DNA of 64,000 nucleotides. Origin: Macrostomum lignano (Eukaryota). The position numbers were made by a program, and so were the translations under genes. A model generated the notes under the pieces. That model was not told the DNA's origin and did not search any database. It saw only the letters and a list, made by a program, of their open reading frames with translations. Positions 4,965 to 56,083 of this stretch are shown here, piece after piece. Position 1 is the first letter of the stretch. Every line of letters starts with the position of its first letter. The stretch covers positions 310,001 to 374,000 of the forward strand of contig NIVC01000992.1 in assembly GCA_002269645.1 (NCBI GenBank), read 5' to 3'.

Positions 4965-5367
4965 TGTACCAATAACGGATTAAAGAAAGTCGAATACTGC
5001 ATGTATTGCACAACCTAATAAATTGCTATACTTCAGCATCTACGAGCTCGTAGTAGCACTAGCAAATGATCCACAGAAGACGAGCGATCCCACTAATTAA
5101 CTGCCGTTCGTCCAATGCTGTTTTTACGTTCGTAGCAAGCAGATAATTTTAGAGTTGCCATGCAGTTCGTTTTATGGACAAGTCGCTGCCTAGGCGCCGG
5201 CAATGTAAATAATTATAGCTTTCTGTGTGCCGACTGCCGCTCGCACTGCAGGTCCGGAGTTAGAAGGGAAACATGATAGCATACATGTACATGTACACGG
5301 CTGTTGCTGTGGAGTACTGTGGCTGCTGTTCGTGAGGTTCAGCTGGAAACAAGTACTCATAAATCAT

Positions 5368-5917
<550 letters not shown>

Positions 5918-6636
5918 GTGTCTGTCTAACTAACTGTCTTTTCAGTCGCTTTCAGTGCGCTTCTGTTTCATATATATTGCTCTGATGAGTCCCTGTTTTC
6001 ATTCAGCGAGCTCCGAGTCAACTGAGCAGCAGCAGGTCAGTTTTCATCAGGAAAACATGAGAATGATTATCAATATGTAATCTATATATAGCTGCATGAT
6101 AATATTTGATATGTTTGCAGTCTATAAAAATAGATTGGAAACACATGATGAATAGAAGCTAGTTAATAATTTTTCTGGCAAAACTATACCATAGCTATAG
6201 CTAGTAACCTGGCTATCCCGCACCATTCCAGCTTTAAGAGTGCCGCTTGCACTTCAGTAGTCATGGAAGTCTTTCTTGGTCAGGTGTAGCGGGTGTAGTG
6301 GGGTGTTTACTTGGACTTGTCAGGGCTAGCCGTCTTCTGCCGTGCTCGCGTGCCCTCCCAAGGGTCCCAACTGTAATTTCGAGATGCTGCATCGCGTGCG
6401 TCAGAGACACAGAGTCCTCTTAGTTTTTCGATAATGCCAAAGGACAAAGAGCTTTGTAGCCGCTCCTTTGTTTCTCACCTTTCGAAGCAATTATTTGAGC
6501 AAAGTAATTAAAAGAAGAGAATTATTTTTGATTAATTTGATTAAAATTCGATGCCATGGACTACTTTCATCTGACGAGAGCAAATCGCCTTCAATTATTT
6601 TTGTGACAACAACTAACGGGCAGAGTTATTGTCTCC

Positions 6637-7544: not shown

Positions 7545-8240
7545 ACAGTGGCGCGGAATTCAAGACAGAGGCACCCTATATTTGAGAAAGTTTTGTCCAA
7601 TTTCATACAATGGCGCTTAATTTAATACGATGGCGCCCAATTTATTACAATGGCGCTTAATTTAATACAATGGCGTCCAATTTAGGAGAATTTAAGACAA
7701 TGGCGCCCAATTTGAGACAATGGCTCTCAATTTCAATTTAAGACAATGGCGCCTAAGTTAAGATAATGGCGCCCAATTTAAGACAATGGCGCCCAATTTA
7801 AGACAATTTAAGACAGTGGCGCCAAATTTTAGACAGTGGCGCCAAATTTTAGACAGTGGCGCCAAATTTAAGACAGTGGCGCCCAATTTAAGACTATCTA
7901 TCTATCATCTATCAGGGGCACCCAATTTAAGACAGTGGCGCCCAATTTAAGACAATGGCGCCCAATTTAAGACAATTAAAAACAGTGGTGCCAAATTTAA
8001 GACAGTGGCGCCCAATTTAAGACAGTGGCGCCCAATTTTAGACAGTGGCGCCAAATTTAAGACAGTGGCGCCCAATTTTAGACAGTGGCGCCGAACTTTA
8101 GACAGTGGCGCCAAATTTAAGACAGTGGCGCCTAATTTAAGACTTGGCGCCCAAGTTAAGACAATGGCGCCCAATTTAAAACAGAGGCGCCCTATATTTG
8201 AGAAAATTTCGCCTAATTTAAGACAGTAGGTGGCACCCAA
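7545..8240. repeat. 20-bp minisatellite (AATTTAAGACAGTGGCGCCC)
   Basis: Tandem units seen directly, increasingly degenerate toward the left. Confidence 0.92.
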
Positions 8241-8313
8241 TTTCGGACATTTTTACATGAACTCCAACTCCAATTTTCAGTTGTTAACACAATCAAACTG
8301 CAATTCAGAGAGC

Positions 8314-11300
8314 ATGGAGCCCGATCAGAACTTCACCCAGCAACTGCTCATGGACATGCTGCACGACCAAATCTACGGGCGCAGAGTGTTGAATGGATCC
8401 GATGTCGCACTGGTGTCCATCTACTCTGTCATTGCCCTGCTGTCTCTATGCGGAAACGGCTTCTTCTTGTTTCTGAGCTTCCGCTATCGAGGACTACGAC
8501 GGCACATATCGTACATCATGATGAGCTTGGCGGGCTCCAACCTGCTGGTCACGTGTACCTGCCTGCCAGTGTCTACGGTGAAAGTGTTCTACACGACTTG
8601 GCGCTTCGGTCTGGCAGGGTGCCGGCTGGTCAGCTTCATTGAAGGTAGACTGGGAGGCTTGAATTAGAAATTCAAAAAAGGACCTCTGTACACCCTGCGT
8701 GAGCGTGTTGTGTGAGTGCGTGACTGCGTACAGTATTGGCGGAGCGTGTTGTGTGAGTGCGTGACTGCGTACAGTATTGGCGGGCTTGCATGTGCTCAGG
8801 ACTCAGCAGTCTGGGCAGAATTGCCGTCAGGCCTGATTGTGGGACGATGTCTTCGAAGGTGTTATGTCCTGCGAATGTTTATTTTTAATTAATAATGTTT
8901 TTGTACGATATGCATTGTTTCACTGCACTGGAATGTACTGTAAAGGCCAAAAAGTGAAACATAAAAAGAAGCATTATTTCCAAAACAAAAGAACATGAAC
9001 GAGCCGTAGAACATGAAAAAATTCATTGGGGGAATTGCTAAGATGTCAAGGCTTACAAGGCTTAGAATTACAAGGATTACAAGAATTACAAGGCTTAGAT
9101 GTCAAGGCTTAGAATTGGTGAGATTTAAAGGCTTACTGGGGGCATTGGTGAGATTTAAAGGCTTACTGGGGGCATTGGTGAAATTTAAAGGCTTACTGGG
9201 GGCATTGGTGAGATTTAAAGGCTTACTGGGGGCATTGGTGAGATTTAAAGGCTTACTGGGGGCATTGGTGAGATTTAAAGGCTTACTGGGGGCATTGGTG
9301 AGATTTAAAGGCTTACTGGGGGCATTGGTGAGATTTAAAGGCTTACTGGGGGAATTGCTGACATTTCAATGCTTACTGGGGGAATTGCTGACATTTCAAG
9401 GCTTACTGGGGGAATTGCTGACATTTCAAGGCTTACTGGGGGAATTGCTGACATTTCAAGGCTTACTGGGGGAATTGGTGACATTTCAAGGCTTACTGGG
9501 GGAATTGGTGAGATGTCAAGGCTTACTGGGGGGGGGGGAATTGCTGAGATGTCAAGGCTTACTGGGGGAATTGGTGAGATGTCAAGGCTTACTGGGGGAA
9601 TTGCTGAGATGTCAAGGCTTACTGGGGGAATTGCTGAGATGTCAAGGCTTACTGGGGGCATTGGTGAGATTTCAAGGCTTACTGGGGGAATTGCTGAGAT
9701 GTCAAGGCTTACTGGGGGAATTGGTGAGATTTAAAGGCTTACTGGGGGAATTGCTGAGATGTCAAGGCTTACTGGGGGGGGAATTGCTGAGATGTCAAGG
9801 CTTACTGGGGGAATTGCTGAGATGTCAAGGCTTACTGGGGGGGGAATTGCTGAGATGTCAAGGCTTACTGGGGGAATTGGTGAGATTTAAAGGCTTACTG
9901 GGAGAATTGCTGAGAGTTCAGGGCTTACAGGGGGAATTGCTGACATTTCAAGGCTTACTGGGGGAATTGGTGAGATTTCAAGGCTTACTGGGGGAATTGC
10001 TGACATTTCAAGGCTTACTGGGGGAATTGCTGAGAGTTCAGGGCTTACAGGGGGAATTGCTGAGAGTTCAAGGCTGAGAAGTCAAAACCCATATTTTTTA
10101 AACCCACGAGTATATAGTCCAATTTTCTGAATATTCAGTGCAAAGCACAAATCTTCGCTTTGCATTATAGATTTTAGCTAACTAATTTTCACGTTGAGTC
10201 TAAGATGCTAAAAGATTTAAGTGAGATGGGATCTGGCTAAAAGTATCTACCGGGCGACAACAGATGATTAATTGCAGAGCCATTAGTCAGACACTGTCTA
10301 GAAAAAAAACTTTCACACCTGTCTTCATCATGACAAATAAAGCAGCCTCCTAAGGTAATTAGTTTTCATTTTACCCTGACTGCTACTGAACCATCTGGAA
10401 CTGGAGAAGTCAGCTAAATATTTAACAACGTCGGTTTCTTGGTCCTTCGCGCGTTAATCTTGCTTGAATTGTTTTTGCAGGTTGAGCCAGGCTCGGTAAG
10501 GGAGGGACCACTTATTAGATTTAGACCCGATGATGTGCCACTTCTATTAGATCTAGACCCGATGATGTGCCATTCATATTAGATCTAGACCCGATGATGT
10601 GTCATTCATATTAGATCTAGACCCGATGATGTGCCATTCATATTAGATCTAGACCCGATGATGTGCCATTCATATTAGATCTAGACCCGATGATGTGCCA
10701 CTTCTATTAGATCTAGACCCGATGATGTGCCATTCATATTAGATCTAGACCCGATGATGTGCCACTTCTATTAGATCTAGACCCGATGATGTGCCATTCA
10801 TATTAGATCTAGACCCGATGATGTGCCACTTCTATTAGATCTAGACCCGATGATGTGCCATTCATATTAGATCTAGACCCGATGATGTGCCACTTCTATT
10901 AGATCTAGACCCGATGATGTGCCACTTCTATTAGATCTAGACCCGATGATGTGCCACTTCTATTAGATCTAGACCCGATGATGTGCCACTTCTATTAGAT
11001 CTAGACCCGATGATGTGCCACTTCTATTAGATCTAGACCCGATGATGTGCCATTCATATTAGATCTAGACCCGATGATGTGCCATTCATATTAGATCTAG
11101 ACCCGATGAGGCCACTAGACCACTTCAGAAGCCAATCCTCACCCCCACCCCCCTCAGGCCTGGCTCTCAGCGTCAACAGTTTCTCTCTGGCCTCCATCGC
11201 CATCCTTCGCGCTCGCCAAAGCGCCCTAATGATTCCGCCAACTCAGACTTCGACTCGAGGACTTCGCATCCTGGTAGCCGGCACCTGGCTAAGCGCTCTC

Positions 11301-12059
11301 GTAGTCTCACTTCCGGCTCTGTTTGCTTTCAAATTGGCGGAAGTGCCGATTCCTGGAGTAGGCAAGAATGCCACAGATCGAGTCTACTTCGTGTGCTCGG
11401 AAGACCGCAGCAACTCGGCCGGACAGAAGGCCTACTCAGCCTACTTGCTGCTCATTCTGTTCCTGTCTCCCTGCATCGTGCTGACTTTCTCCTACGGCTT
11501 CACTGCCCGCTTCATCTCCCGGCAGTTCACCAGGCTGACTAAGAATCCCACAACTAGAAGCCAACAACGGGAAGCGGCCGTGGCGGAGGAGGAGGGAGCT
11601 GAAGCCGTCGAACTGCCGGGAGTCGAGCCGCCGCTGACCACCAATCAGACGTCCGTGATGGCCACGGCTCGCCTGATGGCCGGTGGCAGCCGTCTGAGTG
11701 GCAGCCGACAGCTCAACACTCTGGCATCGTCCAGGTCGCCGGCCTATCAAACTAGGAAGCTGCAGAAACGCACAGTTAAAACGGTTGTCGTACTCGTCAC
11801 GCTGTTCTTCTGCTGCTGGTTTCCGAAAGATCTGATCATCCTGCTGCAGGACTTCATACTGAAGAGTCCGTCGGACTTGAGCAGCCCCCTGCTAGCTGTT
11901 TATCCATACAGCCAGGCGCTCATCTATCTGCACAGCGCCCTCTGCCCCTTTCTATACTGGAGCCTCAGCAGGGTGTTTCAGCACTACGTCCGTAAGGCGT
12001 TCGCTAACAGGGCCGCAGGCGGCGGCCGCGGCGAGGGTCCTGGTGGAGGGAGGGCTTGA
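8314..12059 (+). CDS. Rhodopsin-like (class A) peptide-type GPCR, 2 coding exons, about 410 aa
   Basis: Exon 8314-8644 (MEPDQNFT, TM1 GN, TM2 LAGSNLL, ECL1 W, C3.25) joins by a phase-1 GT-AG intron to exon 11158-12059, giving CRLVSFIEGLALSVNSFSLASIAILRA. ECL2 Cys, TM5, TM6 FFCCWFP and TM7 SALCPFLY follow. 1233 nt in frame. Confidence 0.88.
9110..10075. repeat. 30-bp minisatellite in GPCR intron (GCTTACTGGGGGCATTGGTGAGATTTAAAG)
   Basis: Tandem units; generates the spurious 10-aa-repeat ORF 9013-10077. Confidence 0.95.
10513..11108. repeat. 32-bp minisatellite in GPCR intron (TATTAGATCTAGACCCGATGATGTGCCATTCA, two variants)
   Basis: Period 32 read directly; ends about 50 nt before the exon 2 acceptor. 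Confidence 0.95.
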
Positions 12060-12389
12060 GTATCGACTTTTCAGATGCCCGAATACCAGCTTATATAGGA
12101 GAATCAATATCTATCTCTAGGTGGAAACATTACTATTGATTTTGTCTGCATTGTCGCAGTAAAATGCATGCTGTGTAGTGTTCGCTCGTTCCTTTTGTCT
12201 TATTGTTCTTACAATATAAATCCAATATACTCGTAGCTGCTACAAATGCACACGCGATTAAACAAAATGACCACAAAGAGAATTTTATATGGTATTTTAT
12301 AGAGTGTATTTATTCGATGCGAATTAGTTATTTTTTTGTTTGTTTAGTCTTTTAAGTGTATACTTTAGAAACTGAAGACTCTGTAAGCT

Positions 12390-12816
<427 letters not shown>

Positions 12817-13550
12817 AGCGGTAACTCAGTTTATTGGTCTCAAAAAAATTTCTCCCTGGTCAAAATGTCAAATGCTTTCCCTTCTACCTGCCAGGTTGTA
12901 TTGTCAGTTGTCAGAAAGGGGAAGTGAGGATTTTCCATGCAATGCTGCCGTATCCCAGTCATGACATTTTTGTCTCTTAAGTAGGCCCAACTGCCTGGCA
13001 ACATTCGCATGACTATTCTCATGAGTTTTATTTCCGCAACAAAAATCTATTTTTGTCAATCTGAAAAATGATTTAACTATTTGTTAAAGTACAAGTGTGC
13101 GCAGAATTTGTTATTCATCTAAACTGTTCGAGTTGGTCTTGCCCTTCCTTATTTTTTCATTTCATCTGAGGCTTTCTTTCAGTACACACGGTTGTTGTTG
13201 TTCTATCATTTGCAGATAATAATTATTCTCTAGAATCACCGCTACCTCTTTTATCCCGTATTCAGGTCATTCGTCTGAGCCTCAAGGCTTCAATTTCCTG
13301 TTTGCTTTAATCGCGTTTTATCTTTTGACTGCCTGTCAGATAGAAACAAGGCATTGGTCGGTGTTTTCCAGGTTTTGCCTGAGGGTCTGCTTTGATTGCG
13401 CGTCCACAATATGTGGGCAGGGCAATTATAGATATTCACAATAAACAACTTAGAAACAAAGTATTTTGTCTCCCACCTGAACTGAGGCCATCATTCTATT
13501 TTGAGTTAGTCATTAAATAAATGAGACACCCATGAGTTGTCAGTGAAACA

Positions 13551-14370: not shown

Positions 14371-14755
14371 CAGCATTGAGCTATTATTTAAAATCAATTT
14401 CCCTGTTCAAGAACACCTGCATTGGGGATTATTTCTGCAACATTCTTCCGTCAAATTAATTATCCCCAAAAGCCAGCTGTGGCATTTGCATTGCTTCGCA
14501 TATCTGACAGTAAAAGTACAAACTACCCCATTGGCCAAACATCCCTATCTGCGAGCGTGCAGAAGACCCGGTTCACGGGTTGGCACAAAAATAACCCTCA
14601 GCTAATAACAAAACTGTGCGTCATCAAATCCAGGTTATAAATTTTATGGGCGTGGCAGCCTTGCTGCTTGTGCAATGTCTGTGGGATTTCTTTTATATCA
14701 TCCTTTGATTATTGCCTTATAGTGAGAGGAACAATAGACTGGTCACCGTGTTCGA

Positions 14756-15390
14756 GTATTTCTGTATTTGAACCCAGATGTCTGTATTTGAACCCAGATG
14801 TCTGTATTTGAACCCAGATGTCTGTATTTAAACAAAGATGTCTGTATTTGAACCCAGATGTCTGTATTTAAACAAAGATGTCTGTATTTAAACAAAGATG
14901 TCTGTATTTGAACAAAGATGTCTGTATTTAAACAAAGATGTCTGTATTTAAACAAAGATGTCTGTATTTGAACCCAGATGTCTGTATTTAAACAAAGATG
15001 TCTGTATTTAAACAAAGATGTCTGTATTTGAACAAAGATGTCTGTATTTAAACAAAGATGTCTGTATTTAAACAAAGATGTCTGTATTTAAACAAAGATG
15101 TCTGTATTTGAACAAAGATGTCTGTATTTAAACAAAGATGTCTGTATTTAAACAAAGATGTCTGTATTTGAACCCAGATGTCTGTATTTAAACAAAGATG
15201 TCTGTATTTGAACCCAGATGTCTGTATTTGAACCCAGATGTCTGTATTTGAACCCAGATGTCTGTATTTGAACCCAGATGTCTGTATTTGAACCCAGATG
15301 TCTGTATTTGAACCCAGATGTCTGTATTTGAACCCAGATGTCTGTATTTGAACCCAGATGTCTGTATTTGAACCCAGATGTATGTATTTG
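14756..15390. repeat. 20-bp minisatellite (TCTGTATTTGAACCCAGATG / TCTGTATTTAAACAAAGATG)
   Basis: Tandem units with two interspersed variants. Confidence 0.95.
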
Positions 15391-15698
15391 AGCGGTGTCT
15401 GTATTTGCAAAGATCTGCCTGTATGACTTGAACTAAACGAAAGTACAAACGCTCCCTGATTTCCAAAGTGAAACTTTCTAAGACTGTCATGTCAATCAAG
15501 CTTGAATTCCACAATTTTTTCTACTTAAATCCGATTTCTGAGATTTTTATTCACTTTTTAGTAAAGAACTGTTGACTATCAAATCATTTCAGACACCCAG
15601 TCGAGAGTGTGGGGTAGCAGCTGAGGATTTACACGCAAAAAACCGTCAAAAATATCTTTAAATGGCAGTGACGTAGTAGCAATATTGATTATTGAGTA

Positions 15699-16092
<394 letters not shown>

Positions 16093-16659
16093 CATTAGCA
16101 TAATTTAGCATCTCATTGGAAATCAGATATTATCTGCTTTTAGTAAAAGCAGGGTGCCGCTCCTAGAGGCAAAACACGCGCTAGGGTCATCTCAGGTCAC
16201 ATCCATCCGACACGTATCAACGCGCTGTTTCTCGCCTTGCGCAGCTGAATAAGAAATGAACCCAGAGCTGCAGTTTGTGAGGTGAGCCAGCGAAAGAGAG
16301 AGCGGGAAAACAGAACAGAAAAGCAGAAATGCATAGCAAATTCAGTCTTGCTTAGCTAAATAGACACACACGCGAAACTGCGCACCAGATTGTTTTCCGC
16401 GTCGGCTTTAAACATTCAATCGAATCTGTCTGACAGATAAGACACAGTAGGGCTGCTGTACCATCATAGTTTGCGTTTCGCATGAGTTTGGTGTGGTTTC
16501 AAAAGCAAAAATACGTACATTTTGTGAGCTGCGGCTTGCTTTTGTTAAAATATGGGGAGGCGGCTGTATTGATGAATTGTGCTGAGGGAGAATTTTATGA
16601 AATGTATAAACGATAACATAAACTTAGATATATGAGATTTATATATGAGAGAGTGAAAT

Positions 16660-17720: not shown

Positions 17721-18209
17721 AACACATTCGGGGCGAGACAGGAGAGAGCTGTCTCATTAGTATTTTATGAAGCTTCAAGTCAAGCCTAATTACAATGAGA
17801 GTGCAAAGAATAGGAAGTGAACTCAGCTTTGTGCGTGCTTATTGTTTAATTTTGCTTTAGAAAAACTCTCTGATGAAGGCAGGACAAAGCTCTGATCACG
17901 GTTGCACTAAGTTTGGGCTAAATGTCAAATTTTAATAAAAAAAACGATTAGCCAAGTTGAATTAATCAGTCACGATCGGTTGGGAACATCATGCTGATTA
18001 ACAATAGCCTGTCGAAAAGCTAAACCCGTGCTCGAGCTGGAAATTCAATTCACTTTTTTAATTTTACTTCTTCTATATAGTGGTTGTTAAAAATAAGAAA
18101 TCTCATTTGAAAAATTTATAATCAATTTAGAGCTCAGGAGCCCGTCAAACCCGGGTCTATATGAGCTATTCGTCGAAGTTTGCAAGATCAACAGGACAGT
18201 GCAAACTGG

Positions 18210-18945
18210 CGGAAAACCTCCTGCGGAAATACCCTTGCGGGAAAACCTCCTGTAGGAAAACCTTCTGTGGAAAAACCTCCAGTGGAGAAACCTCTTGCGG
18301 GAAAACCTCTTGCGGGAAAACCTCTTGCGGGAAAACCTCTTGCGGGAAAACCTCTTGCGGGAAAACCTCTTGCGGGAAAACCTCTTGCGGGAAAACCTCT
18401 TGTGGGAAAACCTCTTGCGGGAAAACCTCTTGCGGGAAAACCTCTTGCGGGAAAACCTCTTGTGGGAAAACCTCTTGTGGGAAAACCTCTTGCGGGAAAA
18501 CCTCTTGCGGGAAAACCTCTTGCGGGAAAACCTCTTGTGGGAAAACCTCTTGTGGGAAAACCTCTTGCGGGAAAACCTCTTGCGGGAAAACCTCTTGCGG
18601 GAAAACCTCTTGTGGGAAAACCTCTTGTGGGAAAACCTCTTGCGGGAAAACCTCTTGCGGGAAAACCTCTTGCGGGAAAACCTCTTGCGGGAAAACCTCT
18701 TGCGGGAAAACCTCTTGTGGGAAAACCTCTTGTGGGAAAACCTCTTGCGGGAAAACCTCTTGCGGGAAAACCTCTTGCGGGAAAACCTCTTGTGGGAAAA
18801 ACTCTTGTGGGAAAACCTTTTCAGAGAAAACCTCCTGCCGGGGAAACCTCCTGTCGGGGAAACCTCCTGCCGGGGAAACCTCCTGTCGGGGAAACCTCCT
18901 GTCGGGGAAACCTCTTGCGGGAAAACCTCTTGCGGGAAAACCTCA
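18210..18945. repeat. 15-bp minisatellite (GCGGGAAAACCTCTT)
   Basis: Tandem units; stop-free in three frames only because of the repeat. Confidence 0.95.
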
Positions 18946-20467
18946 CTTCAGCAAAAGCCTCCTTAATGTTTCGTGTGTTCGTGTGTATGCTTGACAATTG
19001 CTGTCAAAGAGTGACGCTGATGAAATTTAAGCGTTTGTAACTGATAGCTATAAAGATGAACGGCACAGAACAGCAATTAATGAGCCGGGGTACCGGGTTT
19101 TACTAATTAAGGGAGGCCTCCTTGACCTTAGCGATCGAATAGCTGACGCTATCTTAAGTTTGGTTTCAAGCACGGACCCATGAAAATCTATCCTAGCAAC
19201 ATTATCCAGCGAGTATAGCAGAAGGACGAATAAAACAGCCGATCGCCCTCAGATTCTTTTTTCCATTTTTTCTGCTTCTACACGTACGCTACGCACCAAG
19301 AGTGCGAAATTGCAGGAAATTCTAATGTTCCCAGCAGGAAATCTTGAGCGATTCGTGCTGCGCCTCATCAACTGATCCTCTCAGCCAGCTTCTTCCCCAC
19401 TCACTAATTGCAATCGTAGTAAAGATCCAGTTCTTATTCAAATTCTTATACATATATGTGGATTAAATTCCTTGCCAGGTGTAGGCCCCGAAATCACGAT
19501 TTATTCTGCTTCATCAGCAGCTCACGAGACTGCAGAGAGCCAGAAAAAGATCGGTTTTTAATCACGCGCTGACTTCCATTCTGTGAGATCGTTTCATTCA
19601 CATAGTTTTCACATAATGCCCGATGTGAACTCCAAGTTACTTCAGAATAAACAGAGAACTCCGAAGCCCATAAAAATTATGAAAATGGTATTCAGTATTT
19701 TATCAGAACGTTTAATTAAAATTATTTCCAGAAACTCTTTTCAGTTCTTTGAAATGGAAAAGATGATTTTAACGAAAAAACGGCTTTACCGGTATAGTGA
19801 CGCGGCGTAAATCTACTTCATTTTAAATAGTTAAATATTAAATTAAAAACTATTACAATAAGGTAAAATTTATGGAATTCATATTGAATTTTTTTATTAT
19901 TAAAATTAATGACAACAGTACTTCGTGTGCTATATTTGTGTTTCATTAACAGCTGCTTTTATGTAACACACGACGATAAGCAAGCTGTTTAAAAACACGA
20001 GCAGACAGATTATAACAAACAAATTCACACTTATTTGAAAACTCACAGAAACAAAGCAAAGTAGGTTTAACTTGGCAAATCAAGCAAGAAATATTCAAGC
20101 AACAAAAAATTTTACTTCATAACTAATTTAAATAAAAATTAACTATATCTATAACATATTGATTGCGTTAGTCATTTTCGATTAGTAGTACAAAAACAGT
20201 TTATAGCTTATTAATCATTTTTTAAAACTAACTGTTTATTTAAACAAAAAAGAACAAACAGTGAATTGACAGTTTGTTAAAAATTGTATTTTAAATAGAT
20301 ATTCATTTTTGATTAGTATAACAAAAACAGTTTATAGCTTATTGATGATTTTATCAAACTGACTGTCAATTCAAGCAAAAAAGAACAAACAGTGAATTGA
20401 CAGTTTGTTAAAAATGGTAGTTTAAATAGTTTAAATTATTACGCAACTTTAAGAAACGGTTTTCAAA

Positions 20468-20857
20468 TCAACGCTTTTGCTTCTGCTGGCGTAGCATCAT
20501 CAGCTGGCGTTGCAGACGATTTCGTCGACTATCAACAAGATTGGCCTCCAGCATCTTCAAATAGATGGCCGCCACGGTGCGCCTGAGCTGCTGGAACTCC
20601 TGCTTGCTGACGCAGTCGGCTGGGGCTGACGATGCGCTCTGCGGTGGCTCTGCCGGCTTGGCCGAATCAGCGGCCGAGTCTGACCGCTTGCCGATGGCTG
20701 GGAAACCCGGACTAAGCGAGAACTGGCGTCGGACCAACTCCTCCAGGTAGTCTTCGTCTCCGTTGGTCGTCCCGGCAACAGGCGAACTGCTGGCTAAGCG
20801 GTTGCAGCCGCTCGCTACTAGAAGCAGAGCTAGCAATAGTTCAATATTCAAAGCCAT
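20468..20857 (-). CDS. Neuropeptide precursor (129 aa); predicted mature peptide pQFSLSPGFPAI-amide
   Basis: Hydrophobic signal peptide (LLLALLLVASG), acidic spacer, RR-QFSLSPGFPAI-GKR processing/amidation cassette, and a helical C-terminal associated peptide with further dibasic sites. Confidence 0.8.
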   Translation of the reverse strand: MALNIELLLALLLVASGCNRLASSSPVAGTTNGDEDYLEELVRRQFSLSPGFPAIGKRSDSAADSAKPAEPPQSASSAPADCVSKQEFQQLRRTVAAIYLKMLEANLVDSRRNRLQRQLMMLRQQKQKR

Positions 20858-21254
20858 CTATAGTCAATAAGGATCTACTGTTGTTTCAATAGAACTATAC
20901 GCACTATACCTGACCAAACCTACTGGATAGCTAGCTGTAAAATTTCTAACCGACTAGAAGAGCAAAGGCTTCATACAATATAGCGCGTGGACTGGTTTTA
21001 TCTTGCAGCGATTTATTCCTTTCTGTCAAAGTGAATTGATAAGCGACGGCCGATTCCGACTTACAAAACCATGAACGGAGCCGCGATAACTGCATGGGCT
21101 GCGGCTTCGTTCATTCCTTTGGCTGGCCGCATGGGAACCGGGGTTACTACACTGATAAATACAATATCTGCACTGCCCACGCAGCCACAGTCACTCAGGC
21201 TGCCTGCCCTCCTTGTGTTGTCGTGTCTGTCCGCTGTCGTGTGAGTCACCGAGC

Positions 21255-21526
<272 letters not shown>

Positions 21527-21954
21527 GAATTAGTTAATAACAGGATTTAAAATCAGTTCTTTTTGACGAGCTATCACTCAGCTTACAGCTATCAAAAACG
21601 TTCGTCTTGTTGTTTTGCATGCTTGATATATAACCTGAACAAGAAGCTTACACAATGGATTCTCAGGTGCCCATCATTTAATCGATTCATTAAACGCTGT
21701 GAAACTTGGATTTTACATCATCTTAGTAGTTAAGACAATCCTCAGCTGTCACATTCTGATCTATTGAAAAAGGCGTAAAACTTGTTTGGGCTATTTGGAA
21801 ATGCCGTGTTTGATGCATGTGCTTTCTATTCATGGTTTGCTACTTACGAGTAGGAATAAAAACATTGTCAAAACATTTTATAATATTTTATCTAATTTAA
21901 TAAATAAAAATAATTGTTTAGACCTTCCTGAATTGGGCCAGATGTGCAACCGAC

Positions 21955-22205
21955 AGCTCAGCCGCAGCTATTGCGCGGCGCATCTGAAGGCTGCGTACGG
22001 CTGTTCAGTCCAAGGACTGGGGCGTCGCTACACACCCTCAATTACCCCAGCTAATGCTGGCACCCATTTTACAGCTGGGTGAACTGAAGCAATGCAGAGT
22101 TAAGTGTATTGCTCAAGGACACAAGTTGTTTCGAGTGGGTCAAGAATCGAATTACCGACCTTCAAGTCGTGAGTCCGACGCTCTTAGCCACTAGGATACA
22201 ACCAC
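21955..22205 (-). mobile_element. tRNA-derived SINE
   Basis: Minus strand has a tRNA-like head with A box (TAGTGGCTAAGAGC) and B-box-like TTCGATT, then GTGTCCTTGAGCAATACACTTAAC and CACCCAGCTGTAAAATGGGT. A related copy lies at 44484-44940. Confidence 0.75.
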
Positions 22206-22485
22206 TGATCTGTACAATATTTAATCTTAGCATTTATAAGGACGTGAATTTAAAAATAGCACCTCATTTAAGCTTATCAATTTCCGAAGCTGCAGTGTAC
22301 TAGTAGGGGTAATGCTAAATAAATTAAAGAGATCTGCAACAGCAGATTAGACAAATTATTAAAACCTCGTGATGTTGCTGCATATCAACTGTTTATATAC
22401 TCGTAGACACTGAAAATTGCTGAAAACTGCAATTGCTTAGTGAGCAATCTGCACTGGGTACCTGCGACTGCTTGCATTCGACATT

Positions 22486-24195
22486 ATGATTGTTGCTAAT
22501 TCAGCCTTCGGTCTGCTTTTGGGAGTGCTGTGTTTCACTGCCGCTGCAGACTCCAAGGCTGTTGTACACTCCACTTTTATTGGTAAGTGTTTATTTAACA
22601 GACTGAATCCCTATCTAACAGGTAGCATCCCTATCTAACAGGTAGCAACCCTATCTAACAGGCAGCATCCCTATCTAAGAGGCAGCATCCCTATCTAACA
22701 GGCAGCATCCCTATCTAACAGGTAGCATCCCTATCTAACAGGTAGCAACCCTATCTAACAGGTAGCACCCCTATCTAACAGTTAGCAACACAATCCAACA
22801 GGTAGAAACCCTATCTAACACGTAGCAACCCTATCTAATAGGTAGCAACCTTATCCAACAGCTAGCAACCCTATCTAACAGGTAGCCACCCTATCTAACA
22901 GGCAGCATCCCTTTCTAAGAGGCAGCATCCCTATCTAACATGTAGCAACACTATCTAACTGCAGCAGCATCCCTATCTAACAGGTAGCATCTCTATCTAA
23001 CAGGCAGCATCTCTATCTAACATGTAGCATCCCTATCTAACAGGTAGCATCTTTATCTAACAGGTAGCAAACCTATCTAGCAGGTAGCGTATCCCTTCGG
23101 AACATTTAACAGTAACGTACAATTAGAATTTTAAAAACGCTTAGGAACGAGGAAAATTAATTTGAGTGCTATTTTCCCAATTCGCAGGTAAAAGCTTCGA
23201 CGTCTTCAGAGGAGATCGAACCAGCCTCGCCCTGATCAACCTGGTGCAACCGCGCACTATGAAATCGTCGCTGATCGGCACCGCACTTCACACCGCACCG
23301 GACTGCACACCTGGAACTAAACTGAGCCACAAAGCGGCCTGGGCAATGTGCTCAGTGTCCGGGATCGGGATCAGGTCCAGCACTGGTCGCATCGGCTGTC
23401 GTGACGTTGGCTGCACCTCGCTGGAGCAGGTGCGCTGCAACACTGTGATCGATATTGTCGCTTTCAAGAAGGCGTGCGGCTGTCAGAGCGTTGTTATCAC
23501 GGGAGGTACAGAAAAGGTCAGGCTGTGACAACTGATGATACCTGTTAGATAGTGTTGCTACCTGTTAGATAGGGATACTATCTGTTAGATAGGGATTCTA
23601 CTTGTTAGATAGGGATGCTACCTGTTACATTGGGTTGCTGCCTGTTAGACACGGTTGCTACCTGTTAGATAGGGTTGCTACCTGTTAGATAGGGATACTA
23701 CCTGTTAGATAGTGTTGCTACCTGTTAGATAGTGTTGCTACCTGTTAGATAGTGTTGCTACCTGTTAGATAGTGTTGCTACCTGTTAGTGTTGCTACCTG
23801 TTAGATAGGGATGCTAACTGTTAGATAGGGATGCTACCTGCTAGATAGAGATGCTACCTGTTAGATGGTGTTGCTACCTGTTAGATAGGTATGATAACTG
23901 TTAGATAGGTATGATAACTGTTAGAAGGGATGCTACCTGTTACGAACGGACTCTACTTGTACATGTAAGTCCAGCATATCCCAAACCCGCTGAGCAGGGG
24001 CACGCAAGCGGCAAGTACAGTCACTACAACGGGTACAAGCTGGACATCGCTCTAAATTCGTGCATAAGCAGCTACATCCAGGCCAACTTCCGGTATAGTG
24101 GTAAACGCCCAGGCGGAGCAGAGCTGTACACAGATGGCCGAGGAAATGTTTACGCTCTGGAGAGCAACCACTGGGACATTGTCTACTATAAGTGA
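22486..24195 (+). CDS. Secreted 207-aa putative zinc peptidase of the M15/LAS (DD-peptidase/Hedgehog fold) type, bacterial-like, 3 exons
   Basis: Exons 22486-22582, 23188-23516 and 23998-24195 join by GTAAGT..CAG and GTCAGG..CAG into 624 nt in frame. Signal peptide, then ITGGTEKGHASGKYSHYNGYKLD (H-x6-D) and ESNHWD. Confidence 0.8.
22607..23088 (+). repeat. 20-bp minisatellite (CCCTATCTAACAGGTAGCAT) in intron 1 of the peptidase gene
   Basis: About 24 tandem units. Confidence 0.95.
23539..23942 (-). repeat. Same 20-bp minisatellite in inverted orientation (ATGCTACCTGTTAGATAGGG) in intron 2
   Basis: About 20 units, the reverse complement of the intron 1 unit. Confidence 0.95.
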
Positions 24196-24833
24196 TTTGA
24201 TCTCTAATATAGATTCAGAGCTATTCAAATAACCGTTGTTTTAAGCGCGGCCAGTAATTTAAACCTTTCTAAATTCGTCGATTGTTCTATAGTTTTAAAA
24301 TTTCCTAACTAACCGATGTTAACAAGTTGTTTGATTCCTAATCAATACTAATAATAACAATAAATTTACGTTTAAAATTTGTTCATCATTAAATTGTTTA
24401 TTTGAGAATTAATTCAATTAAAAAATGTTGTATTAAATACCTTGTTTGTTATCTATTTCCAATAATTAAGTTTCAAATTAAAAAAATGGCTAGAAAAAAA
24501 TATATATTAACGAGTTTTAGAGTACAGATTAAGTAATCGAGAAGTAACATTATATTGAAAAGAGTTTTTCCCCACCCCACCTTGTGAGTCGTTGTGGTAA
24601 TCCATGATTTTTCTTTAGGACGCCAAAATATAGCGACTTCGGCGCTAAAATGAGTGCCTGCGTCAGGGACAACTTAAACTACCGGGACGCGAAACAAGCT
24701 AAATCATGCATGGTGTAAAAAGTTGGGGGCTCGTTTAAAAGCAGTGTTCTATGGCTGTTCCAACTGCAACTCTTCAGTCTAAAGAGGTGTGAGGGCAAAT
24801 AAAAAGCTCTCAACTCTTGTGCGACTGTGAAAA

Positions 24834-25185
24834 ATGTCGAGAAAGTGCAGCGTCTTCAACTGCAGATCAAACTATAACTCAGAAGAAGCCGAACAACGAT
24901 AATTGCTCTTCCTTAAGATGCACGAGAACGGGAGCGTTGGAGACAAACCCTACCAAATATTTTTGAGGTAAGAAGGATTTGATTTGATTTGATTCGAGAC
25001 TTGCAACAATTGGCAAACTGAATCCAATGGAACTTTAACTATTCTACCGCCAGGTGGAGACAGTTATATCGGCCAAATGGATGGACGCGATCCGACTGTA
25101 CAAATCAGAAGAATATCACGTTGTCAAACGAACCGAATTAACCCACGAAGCTTGCTATCCTTCAGTTCAAGCATACAGAAAAACG
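24834..25185 (+). mobile_element. Internally deleted P-element/THAP transposase relic
   Basis: MSRKCSVFNCRSNY...LP*DARERERWRQTLP (broken THAP zinc finger) followed by CNNWQTES and AKWMDAIRLYKSEEYHVVKRTELTHEACYPS, resembling P-type transposase core segments; stops and frameshifts present. Confidence 0.6.
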
Positions 25186-25591
25186 AAGGTAACACTCGCT
25201 CTCCAAGTTTAAAAATCCTGGCGATGCCCCGTTGAAGATCCAGAGAAGCTCGTCTGGGGTGAAGGCCAGTGACCAACCTAGCCAACAAAGTCAGAGTTGA
25301 TGAAGACACACATGTGACTGACGTGCTGATGAACGACTACGACTTCAACGTCGGTCCGACGTCCGATCAATAGGAAACACGTAATGCTACATAGACATCG
25401 TACGACGTCAGACAGAGGTCGGTGCTGCGACGTCGGCCGACGTCGTCGGATTGTTGTACGGGCATGTGATTATTATACTAGTACCTCCATGTTTGAGAAA
25501 AGGTACAAATACATGTAATCGAATAATCGGCCAGTTCGTCATCGATCACAATCAATTGGTTCTACGAACGTGTTCGCGCTCTTTGGTTCAA

Positions 25592-26175
25592 GGACATTTC
25601 GTCTAACCGGGCATTCGTCACATGGCATTTCGTCAACAGGACATTCGTCAACCAGACATTGGTTTGGACAAAGCCAAAATTATTCGTCCGTCATGCTAGC
25701 CTAACTGTTAGCCGTTCATCTGCACTCATGAATGACTAAAATAAACCTATACATGTTAAATTTTAATTAGTTATCTCTCGCTCAACTTAGTAGTGCACCC
25801 TCCTAGCTGCACATCACTTATTTAATATTTAAAGGGAAATGTCTGTCATTGACACTCTTTCAGCAAACAGGGGAATTTTGGAGCTCGCCAAAGCCTGCGA
25901 GGCATTGTTCAGCTGCACGATGCAACCCCAAGGCGCGCGACACAATAATTGAGGACCACAAACGTTTCTACAAAAAATTTACTTCCAAGAAGTTTACACG
26001 TTTTAAGACATCGCTGCCGTACCACTTCTCACATTCTCCGGCTGGTGCAGCTATAATAATCAGCTAAAATTTAAAATTTGCTGAGTTGACCAAATTAATG
26101 CCGCGTTGACGAAATTTGCCGGTTGACGAAATGCCATGCATGCAGTTGATGAAATGCCTGATGACGAAAATGTCC
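25592..26175. mobile_element. Non-autonomous foldback/MITE-like element
   Basis: GGACATTTCGTC at left and GACGAAAATGTCC at right, with subterminal TTCGTCAAC / GTTGACGAAA repeats in mirrored orientation. Confidence 0.55.
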
Positions 26176-28029
26176 GGTCACCAGCTCACTAATTTGCATA
26201 CATGTAGCAGCCCGTCAGCACGTGAAATCTTATGTCAGATCAAATATTCGTCACGACTCACAACATGCACATGTATAGATGGTAGAATTAAAAAGAGCAG
26301 GCCTTCAAATATCAAAATCGTTGACGTTGAGTGTTAAACTAGCTTCGTCCCTTTGATACTATTAGAATAATTTTATGGGTATAATACCTGTTAAGTAGAA
26401 ACAGTTTCAACTTTATTTTCCTTTTTTAGTACTTGCATTTTATACCCTTATACTTATCAGCACTTATGTTCAATTGCCTTACGCTGTACATTTTACTTTT
26501 TAAGTTTGAGATTTATAGTTCATGTTTCTTTCAGAAATTTTCCTTACTTGCGGTTTTTATAACAATTAAAGGCAATATTTTAGCGTTTATATCACTATGA
26601 TCTTTAAAAAATAAGAAAGTATTTTTAATTATAATAAAATTTGTAACGAAAAACGTTAGATTTCGTTTTTTTACGCAGCAATAATATTTTTTGCACTTTT
26701 TTAACTATTAAGCTTCGGTAAATTATTTAAATTGAATATTTTTGTATTATTTCACATCATGCTCGCGCGCGCACACCATGCACGACTGATGCGACATGTC
26801 ACGTGGTGGATACCGGCTAAGGTGACGCTTAAACAGCAATTCATAAATTCATATCCGCGTTATACCTATCTGCTATATCTGCTATATATACCTATCTGCT
26901 ATATCTACATAATAATATGTATAATAATAACAATCTGTACTAACAATATACATAGGCCTAATATGTATTTATGATATCTCTACATATAAAAATCAAAACT
27001 GTCTTATCCATATTTAAATTATCTTGTATTGGGTAGTATTAAATATTAATTAGGCCTATCCCTATATAATTACTATAGCATTTGTAAACTTGTCACAAAT
27101 ATTGAATCTATCAATAATTTCTATTAATATTAATAATTGAAAAAAACTCCTAAAAGCCAAAGGTCACTAATTTAATAAATTTATTAGGCCTATCTATTTT
27201 TGTTTAAGATTGGTAGGCCTAAAGCAGTTTTAATTAGGGCCTTAAACAAAAGTAAGAAATCAAGACAATTTTTTGAAATTGTAATCAATTTTAAAGATCT
27301 AATTAATAAATAGTAAATAGCTAATGCAGTAGGCCTAGGCCTAAGTAAGTCAAAACAAAAAAAGATGAATTGAAAAAATTAGGTATAAAGAACAAGTTTA
27401 AACTTTAAAAGTCATATGGATTCTAGTTCTAGAAAATCAACATAACTTATATATATAATATATATACTAAATTTTTACGTAGGCCTACATTACTAGTTTG
27501 GGGATGGAATCTTAGCTTTAGCCTCTAGATAATAGGGTAGGGCCTAGGCCTAAGATGCAATGTCTAAACCAATTGGTAATTAAATAAAGATTATAGAAAT
27601 AGGATATATAGGCTTAGGTGCCGCGGAACAAGTTTTTGCCAAGGAGCAGGATCAAGTTCCCAAAACTCAAGCCCAGACCAGACCCTGTCTTGGACAGTGA
27701 CCAAAAATTTGAGCAAGACCTAAATTTAATGTTTTCTGCTTAGAGAAAAAGGGGTTCCGCCTTTTAGATATAGGCACAGGCATAGCAAATTCTACTTGAG
27801 TAGGCCTATAAATTTTGCATCTTTTTTTATATTTTAAAATTGCTCATTGTCATTGACTTACTCGTATAATGTATAAAAGGTTGTCTTCCTTGGGGTTTAA
27901 GATATTTGTTAACAAATTAACAATAGAATGAACAATAGGCCTAGCCTAGAATGAAAAATAAAGTTAGCTAAGTGTAATTTAATGTGCAGTGAATGGTATA
28001 TAGTTAATAGTACTCAGTAGAGTGAAAAG

Positions 28030-39877: not shown

Positions 39878-48911
<9,034 letters not shown>

Positions 48912-54589: not shown

Positions 54590-54802
54590 CCTGACTTAGA
54601 AGGCGTCTTTTTGTATATTTCTATTCAGTTCGCTATTTTTTTACTTCTTAAACAGTAAAATAAACGACAAACATTCCGAATCAGAGTATCATAATAGTTA
54701 ATTGCTATTATAGTTGCACTTTTCGGACTCATGTTAGGATTAAACAAGCCTTATTCATTCATGTTATTTTATTGTCATGGCCTTTGCTGCTTGCTGTTGC
54801 AG

Positions 54803-55910: not shown

Positions 55911-55941
<31 letters not shown>

Positions 55942-56007: not shown

Positions 56008-56083
<76 letters not shown>

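What the first reader, a model, noticed from the sequence alone, without database searches (positions are those of the whole stretch)
20468..20857. Candidate new AKH/GnRH-superfamily-like neuropeptide pQFSLSPGFPAI-amide
Seen: signal peptide, RR-QFSLSPGFPAI-GKR (20684-20731), one peptide copy, and a long helical C-terminal peptide with a single Cys. Established: N-terminal Gln cyclises to pGlu and G-K-R yields an amide. The first 8 residues align with RPCH pQLNFSPGW (pQ-x-x-x-S-P-G-aromatic), and single-copy precursors with an associated peptide are typical of AKH/GnRH/corazonin. Deviations: the conserved F4 and W8 are L and F, and a spacer of about 20 aa separates signal and peptide. It may be a divergent member or a new family.
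Basis: partly seen in the sequence, partly recalled or inferred. Interest (0 to 1): 0.72.

Follow-up and report, generated by a model that had tools for sequence, protein, structure and literature searches.

The report
Orphan flatworm neuropeptide precursor, GnRH-like only superficially
A small gene of the flatworm Macrostomum lignano very probably encodes a secreted prohormone that releases one short amidated peptide (pQFSLSPGFPAI-amide); it looks a little like GnRH/AKH hormones but fails the features that define that family, so it is best treated as an undescribed, probably lineage-specific neuropeptide.

Summary
The ORF is real: minus strand 20468-20857, 129 aa. It has a signal peptide, a 25-aa acidic spacer, RR-QFSLSPGFPAI-GKR, and a 71-aa tail with one Cys and a confidently predicted 44-residue helix. 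Its composition is exon-like. The cassette arises in only 0.03% of shuffles.

The window is Macrostomum lignano. The only relative in about 5.8 billion proteins is a 97%-identical second copy, which UniProt auto-names "CRF domain-containing protein". That label fails every test run here.

AKH/GnRH/corazonin membership is not supported. All 20 reference precursors, including two from a polyclad flatworm, place Gln at or within a few residues of the signal-peptide end and have an invariant Trp. Nearly all have two Cys. This ORF has a spacer, no Trp and one Cys in its tail.

In profile-profile comparison it scores 25.1 (29% probability). True members left out of the profile score 43-94. Unrelated precursors score 11-21. 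Permuted versions of the peptide reach 22.9 at most. So the residue order is more GnRH-like than chance, but an allatostatin-A precursor reaches 21 through the same "FSPGF-GKR" motif.

Best reading: an undescribed, single-copy amidated neuropeptide precursor of unassigned family. A very derived GnRH-type ligand remains possible (about 20%).

The parts
20468..20857 (-). Complete single-exon ORF (129 codons plus stop) of the candidate prohormone gene
   Evidence: ORF listing and sequence. GC 0.58 / GC3 0.66 against flanks of 0.29-0.38. The exact protein is present in public M. lignano data and has a 97%-identical second copy, PAA80955.1.
20807..20857 (-). Predicted signal peptide, residues 1-17 (MALNIELLLALLLVASG), with cleavage after A-S-G
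   Evidence: Hydrophobic core at residues 7-15 (7-residue Kyte-Doolittle means up to 3.6), with small residues at -3 and -1. AlphaFold helix at 3-15. No dedicated signal-peptide predictor was available, so the exact cleavage site is inferred.
20732..20806 (-). Acidic propeptide spacer, residues 18-42 (CNRLASSSPVAGTTNGDEDYLEELV), net charge -4, contains Cys18
   Evidence: Sequence. No counterpart exists in any of 20 AKH/GnRH/corazonin precursors.
20726..20731 (-). Dibasic cleavage site Arg43-Arg44
   Evidence: Sequence. Prohormone-convertase cleavage is inferred from established processing rules.
20693..20725 (-). Predicted mature peptide QFSLSPGFPAI (residues 45-55), expected to become pGlu-FSLSPGFPAI-NH2 with [M+H]+ 1145.599
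   Evidence: Sequence and mass. Identical in both gene copies. The string is absent from the searchable literature and from the planarian prohormone catalogue.
20684..20692 (-). Amidation and cleavage signal Gly56-Lys57-Arg58
   Evidence: Sequence. This is the only G[KR][KR] in the protein.
20471..20683 (-). C-terminal 'associated' part, residues 59-129: disordered Ser/Ala/Pro-rich linker, Cys82, then a long basic helix; internal RR sites at 92-93 and 111-112; ends QKQKR without Gly
   Evidence: All 5 differences between the two gene copies fall here, 4 of them nonsynonymous. No significant match to CRF/DH44/ELH or to the spiralian GnRH/corazonin tails; only a marginal match to the AKH/RPCH tail profile (4.4 bits, 22/2000 shuffles).
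20474..20605 (-). Predicted 44-residue alpha-helix (residues 85-128)
   Evidence: AlphaFold2 single-sequence model with DSSP helix at 85-128; block mean pLDDT 87-96.

Best explanation
This is a single-exon Macrostomum lignano gene for a small secreted prohormone of a so far undescribed, probably lineage-restricted neuropeptide family.

Proposed mechanism, inferred from canonical prohormone processing:
1. The signal peptide (residues 1-17) is removed in the ER.
2. Prohormone convertases cut after Arg43-Arg44 and after Lys57-Arg58.
3. A carboxypeptidase trims the basic residues.
4. Peptidylglycine alpha-amidating monooxygenase converts Gly56 into a C-terminal amide.
5. The exposed N-terminal Gln cyclises to pyroglutamate.

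The product is one copy of pGlu-FSLSPGFPAI-NH2 ([M+H]+ 1145.60), blocked at both ends. It presumably acts on a peptide GPCR. The acidic spacer and the 71-residue tail with its helix are by-products or sorting and folding aids rather than hormones.

What is shown: the ORF, its sequence features, its coding-like composition, its restriction to M. lignano in the databases searched, and its failure to meet the defining features of the AKH/GnRH/corazonin and CRF families.

What is inferred: secretion, processing, neuronal expression and receptor action.
For: - Anatomy: signal peptide, acidic spacer, RR-Q...-GKR, single copy.
- The cassette is rare by chance: 0.029% of shuffles, and unique among 81 window ORFs.
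- Exon-like GC and GC3.
- Annotated gene with a second 97%-identical copy. The peptide, its flanking sites and the whole 5' half are identical between the copies.
- No homolog beyond that copy, either in the 5.8-billion-protein word-seeded search or in the exhaustive HMMER search of 1.84 billion representatives.
- No Pfam family.
- Against the AKH/GnRH/CRZ profile the score is 25.1. That lies between the negatives (11-21) and the true members (43-94).
- A family-profile search of the big database returned 63 canonical members, but neither this protein nor any other Macrostomum protein.
- M. lignano is known to keep other classical peptide precursors such as vasotocin-type (PMC8896804), so peptidergic signalling of this style is expected in the species.
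Against: - No expression, peptidomic or receptor data could be obtained. No paper mentions the gene or the peptide.
- There are no orthologs from other species, so conservation of the peptide cannot be shown.
- The two copies are too similar, and their differences too patchy, to show constraint.
- The residue order of the peptide is more GnRH/AKH-like than any of 400 control cores. 'Unrelated orphan family' may therefore understate a real, very old relationship.
- Signal-peptide cleavage was judged by simple rules only.
Confidence: 0.6

Rival explanations
1. It is a true but highly derived member of the GnRH/AKH/corazonin superfamily. In this reading Trp was replaced by Phe and Phe4 by Leu, the second Cys of the associated peptide was lost, and an N-terminal propeptide was acquired so that a convertase rather than signal peptidase exposes the Gln. 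It would act on a GnRH/corazonin-type GPCR.
For: - pGlu start, length of 11, GKR, single copy, and a tail with Cys followed by a helix.
- An ungapped fit to pQ-[hydrophobic]-[S/N/T]-x-S-P-G-[aromatic]. Closest peptides are RPCH QLNFSPGW, Terebratalia QISFSPTW and Lineus corazonin QGFHYSPGWEPS.
- The spiralian GnRH-1-like peptide QFSFSLPGRWGS shares QFS-S-PG.
- hhalign aligns the peptide, the GKR and Cys82 in register with P 6e-4.
- None of 200 permuted and none of 200 random cores reaches that score.
- GnRH and corazonin systems do exist in flatworms (polyclads) (PMC13551398; sequences).
- No canonical GnRH/corazonin precursor of M. lignano was found, so that slot may be empty.
Against: - Three family-defining features fail: there is no Trp (invariant in 20/20), the Gln is not next to the signal peptide (20/20 have it there), and one of the two near-invariant Cys is missing.
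- The score of 25.1 is well below the weakest true member (43.3). The polyclad flatworm precursors score 52 and 44.
- An unrelated allatostatin-A precursor reaches 21.1 through the same FSPGF-GKR motif.
- Tail-only profiles: spiralian GnRH/CRZ 1.7 bits (393/2000 shuffles reach it). The AKH/RPCH profile gives 4.4 bits, but it aligns only the Ala/Ser-rich stretch plus the Cys, not the helix.
- No hit to Pfam Adipokin_hormo or GnRH even at E up to 10.
- p of about 0.01 does not survive correction for roughly 50-100 peptide families.
Confidence: 0.2
2. The bioactive product is the C-terminal helix, a CRF/DH44/egg-laying-hormone-type peptide. This is what the UniProt automatic name of the second copy implies ('Corticotropin-releasing factor domain-containing protein').
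For: - The UniProt name for A0A267G4K0.
- A long basic helix at 85-128 with Arg/Gln/Leu-rich heptads that superficially recalls ELH/CRF.
Against: - No match to Pfam CRF for the whole ORF or for the tail alone at E up to 10.
- No CRF/urocortin chain among PDB sequence hits at E up to 10.
- Against a profile of 14 published DH44/ELH/CRF-type mature peptides the tail scores -2.8 bits, and 1808 of 1998 shuffles do as well or better. Left-out true members score 4-44 bits.
- There is no C-terminal Gly, so no amide, and no S-L-S-I/V-type N-terminal motif.
- 4 of the 5 differences between the copies are nonsynonymous and lie in this part; two (N113T, R123L) are within the helix.
Confidence: 0.03
3. 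It is not a neuropeptide gene. It is a small secreted or gland protein, or a young lineage-specific ORF, whose RR...GKR cassette is coincidental.
For: - No orthologs outside M. lignano.
- No expression or peptide evidence.
- The tail is rich in K/R/Q, so basic pairs are frequent (five dibasic sites).
- No demonstrable purifying selection.
Against: - The full cassette arises in only 0.029% of shuffles of this same composition.
- The acidic stretch directly upstream of RR, the Gln right after it, and a core free of K/R/C ending in the protein's only G[KR][KR] are the typical prohormone grammar.
- The peptide core is significantly non-random relative to a hormone family profile.
Confidence: 0.15

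Closest known systems
Protostome AKH / RPCH and spiralian 'GnRH-1-like' peptides (RPCH pQLNFSPGW-NH2; Terebratalia pQISFSPTW-NH2; Paranemertes/Hemithiris pQFSFSLPGRWGS-NH2; Thiel et al. 2021, PMC8557429 supplements)
   Same: N-terminal Gln, C-terminal G-K-R, 8-12 residues, and one copy per precursor followed by a tail containing Cys and a helix. Shared pattern Q-hydrophobic-S/N-x-S-P-G-aromatic. Best pairwise scores of all 26 family peptides tested. The peptide, the GKR and the first Cys align in register in hhalign.
   Different: No Trp (Phe instead) and Leu instead of the Phe/Tyr at position 4. A 25-aa acidic spacer plus RR lies between the signal peptide and the Gln. There is a -PAI extension. 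The tail has one Cys, not two, and a 44-residue helix instead of about 20 residues. The profile score is about half that of the weakest true member.
Polyclad flatworm GnRH/AKH and corazonin precursors (Prostheceraeus crozieri: QTFHYSNAWRP-GKR and QNIHFSDDDGAGSSSWQA-GKR; Piovani et al. 2023 supplement)
   Same: Same phylum. pGlu/amide single-copy peptides, each followed by a Cys-containing tail.
   Different: The polyclad precursors keep every canonical feature: Gln right after the signal peptide, the Trp and two Cys. When left out of the profile they are still recognised at 94-96% probability, with scores of 52 and 44. The Macrostomum ORF is not (29%, score 25).
CRF / DH44 / egg-laying hormone family (the UniProt automatic label of the second copy)
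   Same: Only a long basic, Arg/Gln/Leu-rich helix near the C-terminus.
   Different: No Pfam CRF match. The score against a family profile is negative and worse than about 90% of shuffles. There is no amidation Gly and no conserved N-terminal motif.
Allatostatin-A-type peptides of phoronids (…FFSPGF-NH2, …FYSPGF-NH2; PMC8557429 supplement)
   Same: They share the tetrapeptide S-P-G-F close to a G-K-R site.
   Different: Those precursors carry many copies. The motif is at the very C-terminus of each peptide, and the peptides do not start with Gln. It is listed mainly as a warning that 'FSPG-aromatic-GKR' recurs in unrelated families: the phoronid precursor scores 21.1 against the GnRH profile.

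Membership tests
AKH/GnRH/corazonin superfamily precursors | Mature peptide begins with Gln (giving pGlu) | tested here: met
   Gln45 immediately follows Arg43-Arg44.
AKH/GnRH/corazonin superfamily precursors | The hormone follows the signal peptide directly, so signal peptidase exposes the Gln | tested here: not met
   In all 20 aligned members the Gln lies at or within a few residues of the end of the signal peptide. Here a 25-residue acidic spacer plus RR intervenes.
AKH/GnRH/corazonin superfamily precursors | G-K-R (amidation plus dibasic site) immediately after the peptide, with one copy per precursor | tested here: met
   Gly56-Lys57-Arg58. It is the only G[KR][KR] in the protein.
AKH/GnRH/corazonin superfamily precursors | Invariant Trp in the peptide (position 8 of AKH/RPCH, or the equivalent in GnRH and corazonin) | tested here: not met
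   Trp is invariant in 20/20 aligned precursors. The ORF contains no Trp at all, and Phe52 occupies the aligned position.
AKH/GnRH/corazonin superfamily precursors | Aromatic residue (Phe/Tyr) before the conserved Ser/Thr (the 'hFS' core) | tested here: not met
   Leu48 precedes Ser49. The family consensus is H-F-S or F/Y-S/T.
AKH/GnRH/corazonin superfamily precursors | Associated peptide with two Cys bracketing a helix of about 20 residues | tested here: not met
   Both Cys are at least 90% conserved in the alignment. The ORF's tail has only Cys82, followed by a 44-residue helix. Locust AKH-I tails also have a single Cys, so this feature is not absolute.
AKH/GnRH/corazonin superfamily precursors | Profile-level similarity in the range of true members | tested here: not met
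   hhalign score 25.1 and probability 29%. Leave-one-out true members score 43.3-94.0 at 94-99%. Unrelated precursors score 10.7-21.1. Not among the 63 hits of the family-profile database search. No Pfam PF06377 or PF00446 hit.
AKH/GnRH/corazonin superfamily precursors | Activates a GnRH/AKH/corazonin-type GPCR of the same species | not testable with these tools
   The M. lignano receptor repertoire could not be searched. The GPCR gene about 8.4 kb away is not of this type: its best solved relatives are NPFF2, CCK-A and orexin receptors, and no GnRH or vasopressin/oxytocin receptor appears among the 60 hits shown.
CRF / DH44 / ELH family | Match to the family profile (Pfam PF00473, or a profile of mature peptides) | tested here: not met
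   No Pfam hit at E up to 10. -2.8 bits against a 14-peptide profile, with 1808/1998 shuffles scoring at least as well.
CRF / DH44 / ELH family | C-terminal amidation of a peptide of about 36-46 residues flanked by basic sites | tested here: not met
   The protein ends ...QQKQKR* with no Gly before the basic pair. Internal RR sites would cut the helix into 17- and 15-residue pieces.
Generic amidated-neuropeptide prohormone | N-terminal signal peptide | tested here: met
   Hydrophobic core at residues 7-15 and an A-x-G cleavage motif; helix at 3-15. Judged by rules only, because no dedicated predictor was available.
Generic amidated-neuropeptide prohormone | Peptide flanked by dibasic sites, with Gly as amide donor | tested here: met
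   RR|QFSLSPGFPAI|G|KR. Chance frequency is 0.029% of shuffles.
Generic amidated-neuropeptide prohormone | Expression in neurons or endocrine cells and detection of the processed peptide | not testable with these tools
   No paper in the library mentions the gene, protein accession or peptide.

The most novel reading that the evidence does not exclude
The peptide is the Macrostomum representative of the GnRH/AKH/corazonin lineage in an extremely derived form. It would be the first known member without the otherwise invariant Trp, and the first in which the N-terminal pGlu is exposed by a prohormone convertase after an acquired propeptide rather than by signal peptidase. It would signal through a co-evolved GnRH/corazonin-type receptor.
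Probability: 0.2. Interest if true: 0.6.

Novelty: new member of a known kind. Interest (0 to 1): 0.4.

Why it matters
Macrostomum lignano is a laboratory model flatworm from an early-branching flatworm lineage. Its neuropeptide complement is poorly described.

A 2026 review (PMC13551398) states that polyclads keep GnRH/corazonin systems whereas planarians and parasitic flatworms lost them. It does not mention Macrostomum.

A validated new amidated peptide would add a handle for studying peptidergic control in this model. If it proved to be a Trp-less GnRH-type ligand, it would show how far a ligand of this ancient family can drift, and it would help date the loss or transformation of the system within flatworms.

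On a practical level, the UniProt name 'CRF domain-containing protein' for this gene family is unsupported and should not be propagated.

Tried and rejected
1. **CRF/DH44/ELH identity of the tail (UniProt label).** Rejected: no Pfam or PDB sequence match, and a negative score against a family profile.

2. **Homology of the tail to AKH/RPCH/GnRH/corazonin associated peptides.** My eye-catching 'C…AIYLKMLEAN' versus 'C…IYKMIQNEA' lead did not hold up. The AKH-tail HMM gives 4.4 bits (22/2000 shuffles reach it) and aligns only the Ala/Ser-rich stretch plus the Cys, not the helix. The spiralian and combined profiles are not significant.

3. **Ligand-receptor gene linkage.** The GPCR gene about 8.4 kb away matched Platynereis GnRH and corazonin receptors better than two other receptors. 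A wider panel shows it is closest to NPFF2, CCK-A, orexin, bombesin and QRFP receptors, with no GnRH or vasopressin/oxytocin receptor among the 60 hits shown. Rejected.

4. **Orthologs.** None turned up in the word-seeded 5.8-billion-protein search, in the exhaustive 1.84-billion-representative HMMER search, or in a family-profile search. Polyclad sequences used as queries were not returned either, so flatworm transcriptomes are largely absent from these databases and absence is weak evidence.

5. **Selection from the two M. lignano copies.** The flanks are 96-99.9% identical and the differences are patchy. There are none at 20640-21340 and there is a divergent patch at 20213-20639. No constraint on the peptide can be inferred, only that the tail shows 4 nonsynonymous to 1 synonymous change.

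6. **Literature.** The peptide string, its fragments and the gene and protein identifiers are absent from the full-text library. Peptide fragments are also absent from the planarian prohormone catalogue and its supplements.

7. **M. lignano GnRH/corazonin-type receptors.** I decided against spending the last big protein search on this. Distant flatworm receptors would rank below thousands of closer GPCR clusters and the result would not be interpretable.
Full report
**What is there**

The finding lies on the minus strand. ORF 20468-20857 encodes 129 residues:

MALNIELLLALLLVASG / CNRLASSSPVAGTTNGDEDYLEELV / RR / QFSLSPGFPAI / G / KR / SDSAADSAKPAEPPQSASSAPADCVSKQEFQQLRRTVAAIYLKMLEANLVDSRRNRLQRQLMMLRQQKQKR*

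- The N-terminus has a nine-residue hydrophobic core and an A-S-G cleavage motif.
- The spacer is acidic (net charge -4) and contains Cys18.
- The tail has a single Cys (C82) and two more RR sites. It ends in KR without a preceding Gly.
- AlphaFold2, run on the single sequence, predicts helices at 3-15, 34-46 and 85-128. The last has block-mean pLDDT of 87-96. Residues 46-81 are disordered.

**Is it a real gene, and more than chance?**

The window is eukaryotic, with split genes and abundant micro- and minisatellites.

- The ORF has GC 0.58 and GC3 0.66. The window's other exons (GPCR, ribosomal P protein, ASC channel, helicase) have 0.56-0.59. The flanking kilobases have 0.29-0.38.
- The exact protein is in public Macrostomum lignano data. 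A 97%-identical second copy is PAA80955.1 / BOX15_Mlig030574g1 on contig NIVC01000556.1.
- The cassette [KR][KR]-Q-x(7-14)-G-[KR][KR] appears in 0.029% of 100,000 shuffles of residues 18-129.
- Among 81 ATG-ORFs of at least 60 aa in the window, this is the only one that combines a hydrophobic N-terminus with such a cassette.

**Relatives**

Apart from the second copy, nothing was found. This holds for the word-seeded search of about 5.8 billion proteins and for the exhaustive HMMER search of 1.84 billion representatives.

Pfam gives no family at E up to 10, either for the whole ORF or for the tail.

The two copies differ at five codons, all after the GKR: Q73H, a silent change at A78, V83A, N113T and R123L. 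The surrounding DNA is 96-99.9% identical and the differences are patchy. There are none between 20640 and 21340, then a divergent patch at 20213-20639. This says nothing about constraint on the peptide. It says only that the tail shows no sign of purifying selection.

**The UniProt label**

UniProt auto-names the second copy 'Corticotropin-releasing factor domain-containing protein'. I tested this label in three ways:

- There is no Pfam CRF hit.
- No CRF or urocortin chain appears among PDB sequence matches.
- I built a profile from 14 published DH44/ELH/CRF-type mature peptides (PMC8557429 supplement). Against it the tail scores -2.8 bits, and 1808 of 1998 shuffles score at least as well. 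Family members left out of the profile score 4-44 bits.

There is also no amidation Gly at the C-terminus. The label is unsupported.

**The AKH/GnRH hypothesis: the peptide**

I ran an N-anchored BLOSUM62 comparison against 26 family peptides. The best partners were:

| Partner | Peptide | Score |
|---|---|---|
| RPCH | QLNFSPGW | 24 |
| Terebratalia GnRH-1-like | QISFSPTW | 19 |
| Lineus corazonin | QGFHYSPGWEPS | 19 |

The real order beats permutations of the same residues at p = 0.015 for the best score and p = 0.007 for the mean of the top five. It beats random Q-initiated peptides at p = 0.006. This is suggestive, but it would not survive correction for the dozens of peptide families available for comparison.

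**The AKH/GnRH hypothesis: the precursor**

A 2026 review reports GnRH- and corazonin-type peptides and receptors in polyclad flatworms, and their loss in planarians and parasites. It does not mention Macrostomum (PMC13551398).

The supplement of Piovani et al. 2023 gives the Prostheceraeus crozieri precursors:

- GnRH/AKH: signal peptide, then QTFHYSNAWRP-GKR, then a tail with two Cys.
- Corazonin: signal peptide, then QNIHFSDDDGAGSSSWQA-GKR, then a tail with two Cys.

I aligned 20 precursors from polyclad, oyster, phoronids, brachiopods, nemerteans, a bivalve, crustaceans and insects.

- The peptide Trp and the GKR are invariant.
- The Gln sits at or within a few residues of the signal-peptide end in all 20.
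- Two Cys bracketing a helix of about 20 residues are at least 90% conserved.

The Macrostomum ORF has no Trp anywhere, a 25-residue spacer plus RR before the Gln, and one Cys in its tail.

hhalign of this family profile against the ORF aligns RRQFSLSPGFPAI-GKR…C82 in register with Q-x-h-F-S-x-g-W-…-GKR…C. It gives score 25.1, P 6e-4 and probability 29%. The controls calibrate this as follows:

| Sequence set | hhalign score |
|---|---|
| Window ORF | 25.1 |
| Peptide core permuted, all else fixed (n=200) | 16.8 ± 1.9, max 22.9 |
| Peptide core random (n=200) | 15.6 ± 1.6, max 21.9 |
| Whole sequence shuffled (n=200) | 9.4 ± 1.6 |
| 11 unrelated real neuropeptide precursors | 10.7-21.1 |
| True members, each left out of the profile | 43.3-94.0 (probability 94-99%) |

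The top unrelated precursor is a phoronid allatostatin-A, which scores through its FFSPGF-GKR copies. The two polyclad precursors score 51.8 and 43.6 when left out.

About two thirds of the score therefore comes from the generic Q…GKR…Cys scaffold. The remaining third is real but small, and a similar motif occurs in an unrelated family. The ORF sits just above the negatives and far below every true member.

Profiles built from the tails alone are not convincing:

- 4.4 bits against AKH/RPCH tails (22/2000 shuffles reach it). The aligned stretch is only the Ala/Ser-rich run plus the Cys.
- 1.7 bits against spiralian GnRH/corazonin tails (393/2000 shuffles reach it).

A search of the big database with the family profile returned 63 canonical members. 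It returned neither this protein nor any other Macrostomum protein. The polyclad queries themselves were not returned either, so flatworm transcriptomes are poorly represented and absence is weak evidence.

**Neighbouring receptor**

A two-exon rhodopsin-type GPCR gene lies about 8.4 kb away, at 8230-8644 and 11158-12059 on the plus strand.

In a four-receptor panel it matched the Platynereis GnRH and corazonin receptors best. Against all solved structures its closest relatives are NPFF2, CCK-A, orexin, bombesin-type and QRFP receptors. No GnRH or vasopressin/oxytocin receptor appears among the 60 hits shown. I therefore do not claim a ligand-receptor gene pair.

**Conclusion**

The gene most likely encodes a secreted prohormone. 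Standard processing would be:

1. Signal peptidase removes residues 1-17.
2. Convertases cut at RR44 and KR58.
3. Carboxypeptidase trims the basic residues.
4. Amidation uses Gly56.
5. Gln45 cyclises.

This yields a single pGlu-FSLSPGFPAI-NH2 with [M+H]+ 1145.599. Every processing step is inferred from established prohormone biochemistry. None is shown.

The precursor is not a demonstrable member of the AKH/GnRH/corazonin superfamily, because three defining features were tested and failed. It is not a CRF-type precursor either.

A residual, statistically modest resemblance to GnRH-type peptides leaves about a 20% chance that it is an extremely derived member. A coincidental cassette in a non-neuronal secreted protein remains possible at about 15%.

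Neither the peptide nor the gene is mentioned in the searchable literature. It counts as an undescribed candidate of a familiar kind. It is moderately interesting, and it can be tested directly by peptidomics, in situ hybridisation, comparative transcriptomics within Macrostomum, and receptor assays.

Noticed in passing
window 8230-8644 and 11158-12059 (+): Two-exon rhodopsin-family peptide-receptor-like GPCR gene (Pfam 7tm_1), tail-to-tail with the peptide gene and about 8.4 kb away. The usual DRY motif reads LRA. Its closest solved relatives are NPFF2, CCK-A, orexin, bombesin-type and QRFP receptors, not GnRH or vasopressin receptors. The intron carries a minisatellite (9013-10077).
   Followed up: partly
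window 20169-20429: Two tandem copies of a 130-nt AT-rich direct repeat (88% identical), beginning about 40 nt past the stop codon in the 3' flank of the peptide gene. Most differences between the two genomic copies of the locus cluster here and in the adjoining 3' part of the ORF.
   Followed up: partly
L001 (NIVC01000556.1) vs window 18211-27000: The second genomic copy of the locus is 99.95% identical over 5.7 kb upstream (window 21340-27000) but only about 96% identical over 18211-21457. Differences are concentrated in tandem repeats. This is consistent with recent duplication or haplotypes in the partly polyploid M. lignano genome, with mosaic divergence.
   Followed up: partly
window 60880-62859 (-): At least two adjacent ORFs match the amiloride-sensitive sodium channel family (Pfam ASC; DEG/ENaC). 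Some invertebrate members of this family are peptide-gated (FaNaC-type). Whether this one is was not examined.
   Followed up: no
window 2777-3835 (+): ORF with a reverse-transcriptase domain (Pfam RVT_1), probably a non-LTR retrotransposon remnant. An overlapping antisense ORF is likely spurious.
   Followed up: no
window 41470-48911 (+): Multi-exon DEAD/DEAH-box helicase gene with a weak (below-threshold) match to a DHX34-like C2H2 zinc finger in its last large exon. The introns hold minisatellites.
   Followed up: no
window 52746-53114 (+) and 54731-56732 (+): A 60S acidic ribosomal P protein gene (Pfam Ribosomal_60s), followed by exons of a transporter resembling the acetyl-CoA transporter family (Pfam Acatn; one exon above the family threshold, another below it).
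   Followed up: no
window 5227-5985, 12356-12964, 14743-15410, 15658-16111, 18161-19040, 42156-42791, 57176-58078: Unusually dense micro- and minisatellite arrays. They generate many long spurious ORFs, such as 'YLSI' repeats, a trinucleotide run of about 450 nt, and a 'GKTSC'/'GKPLA' minisatellite.
   Followed up: no
UniProt A0A267G4K0 (second copy, P0001): The automatic UniProt name 'Corticotropin-releasing factor domain-containing protein' is not reproduced by Pfam or by an independent family profile. It looks like a false-positive domain call on an Arg/Gln/Leu-rich helix.
   Followed up: yes
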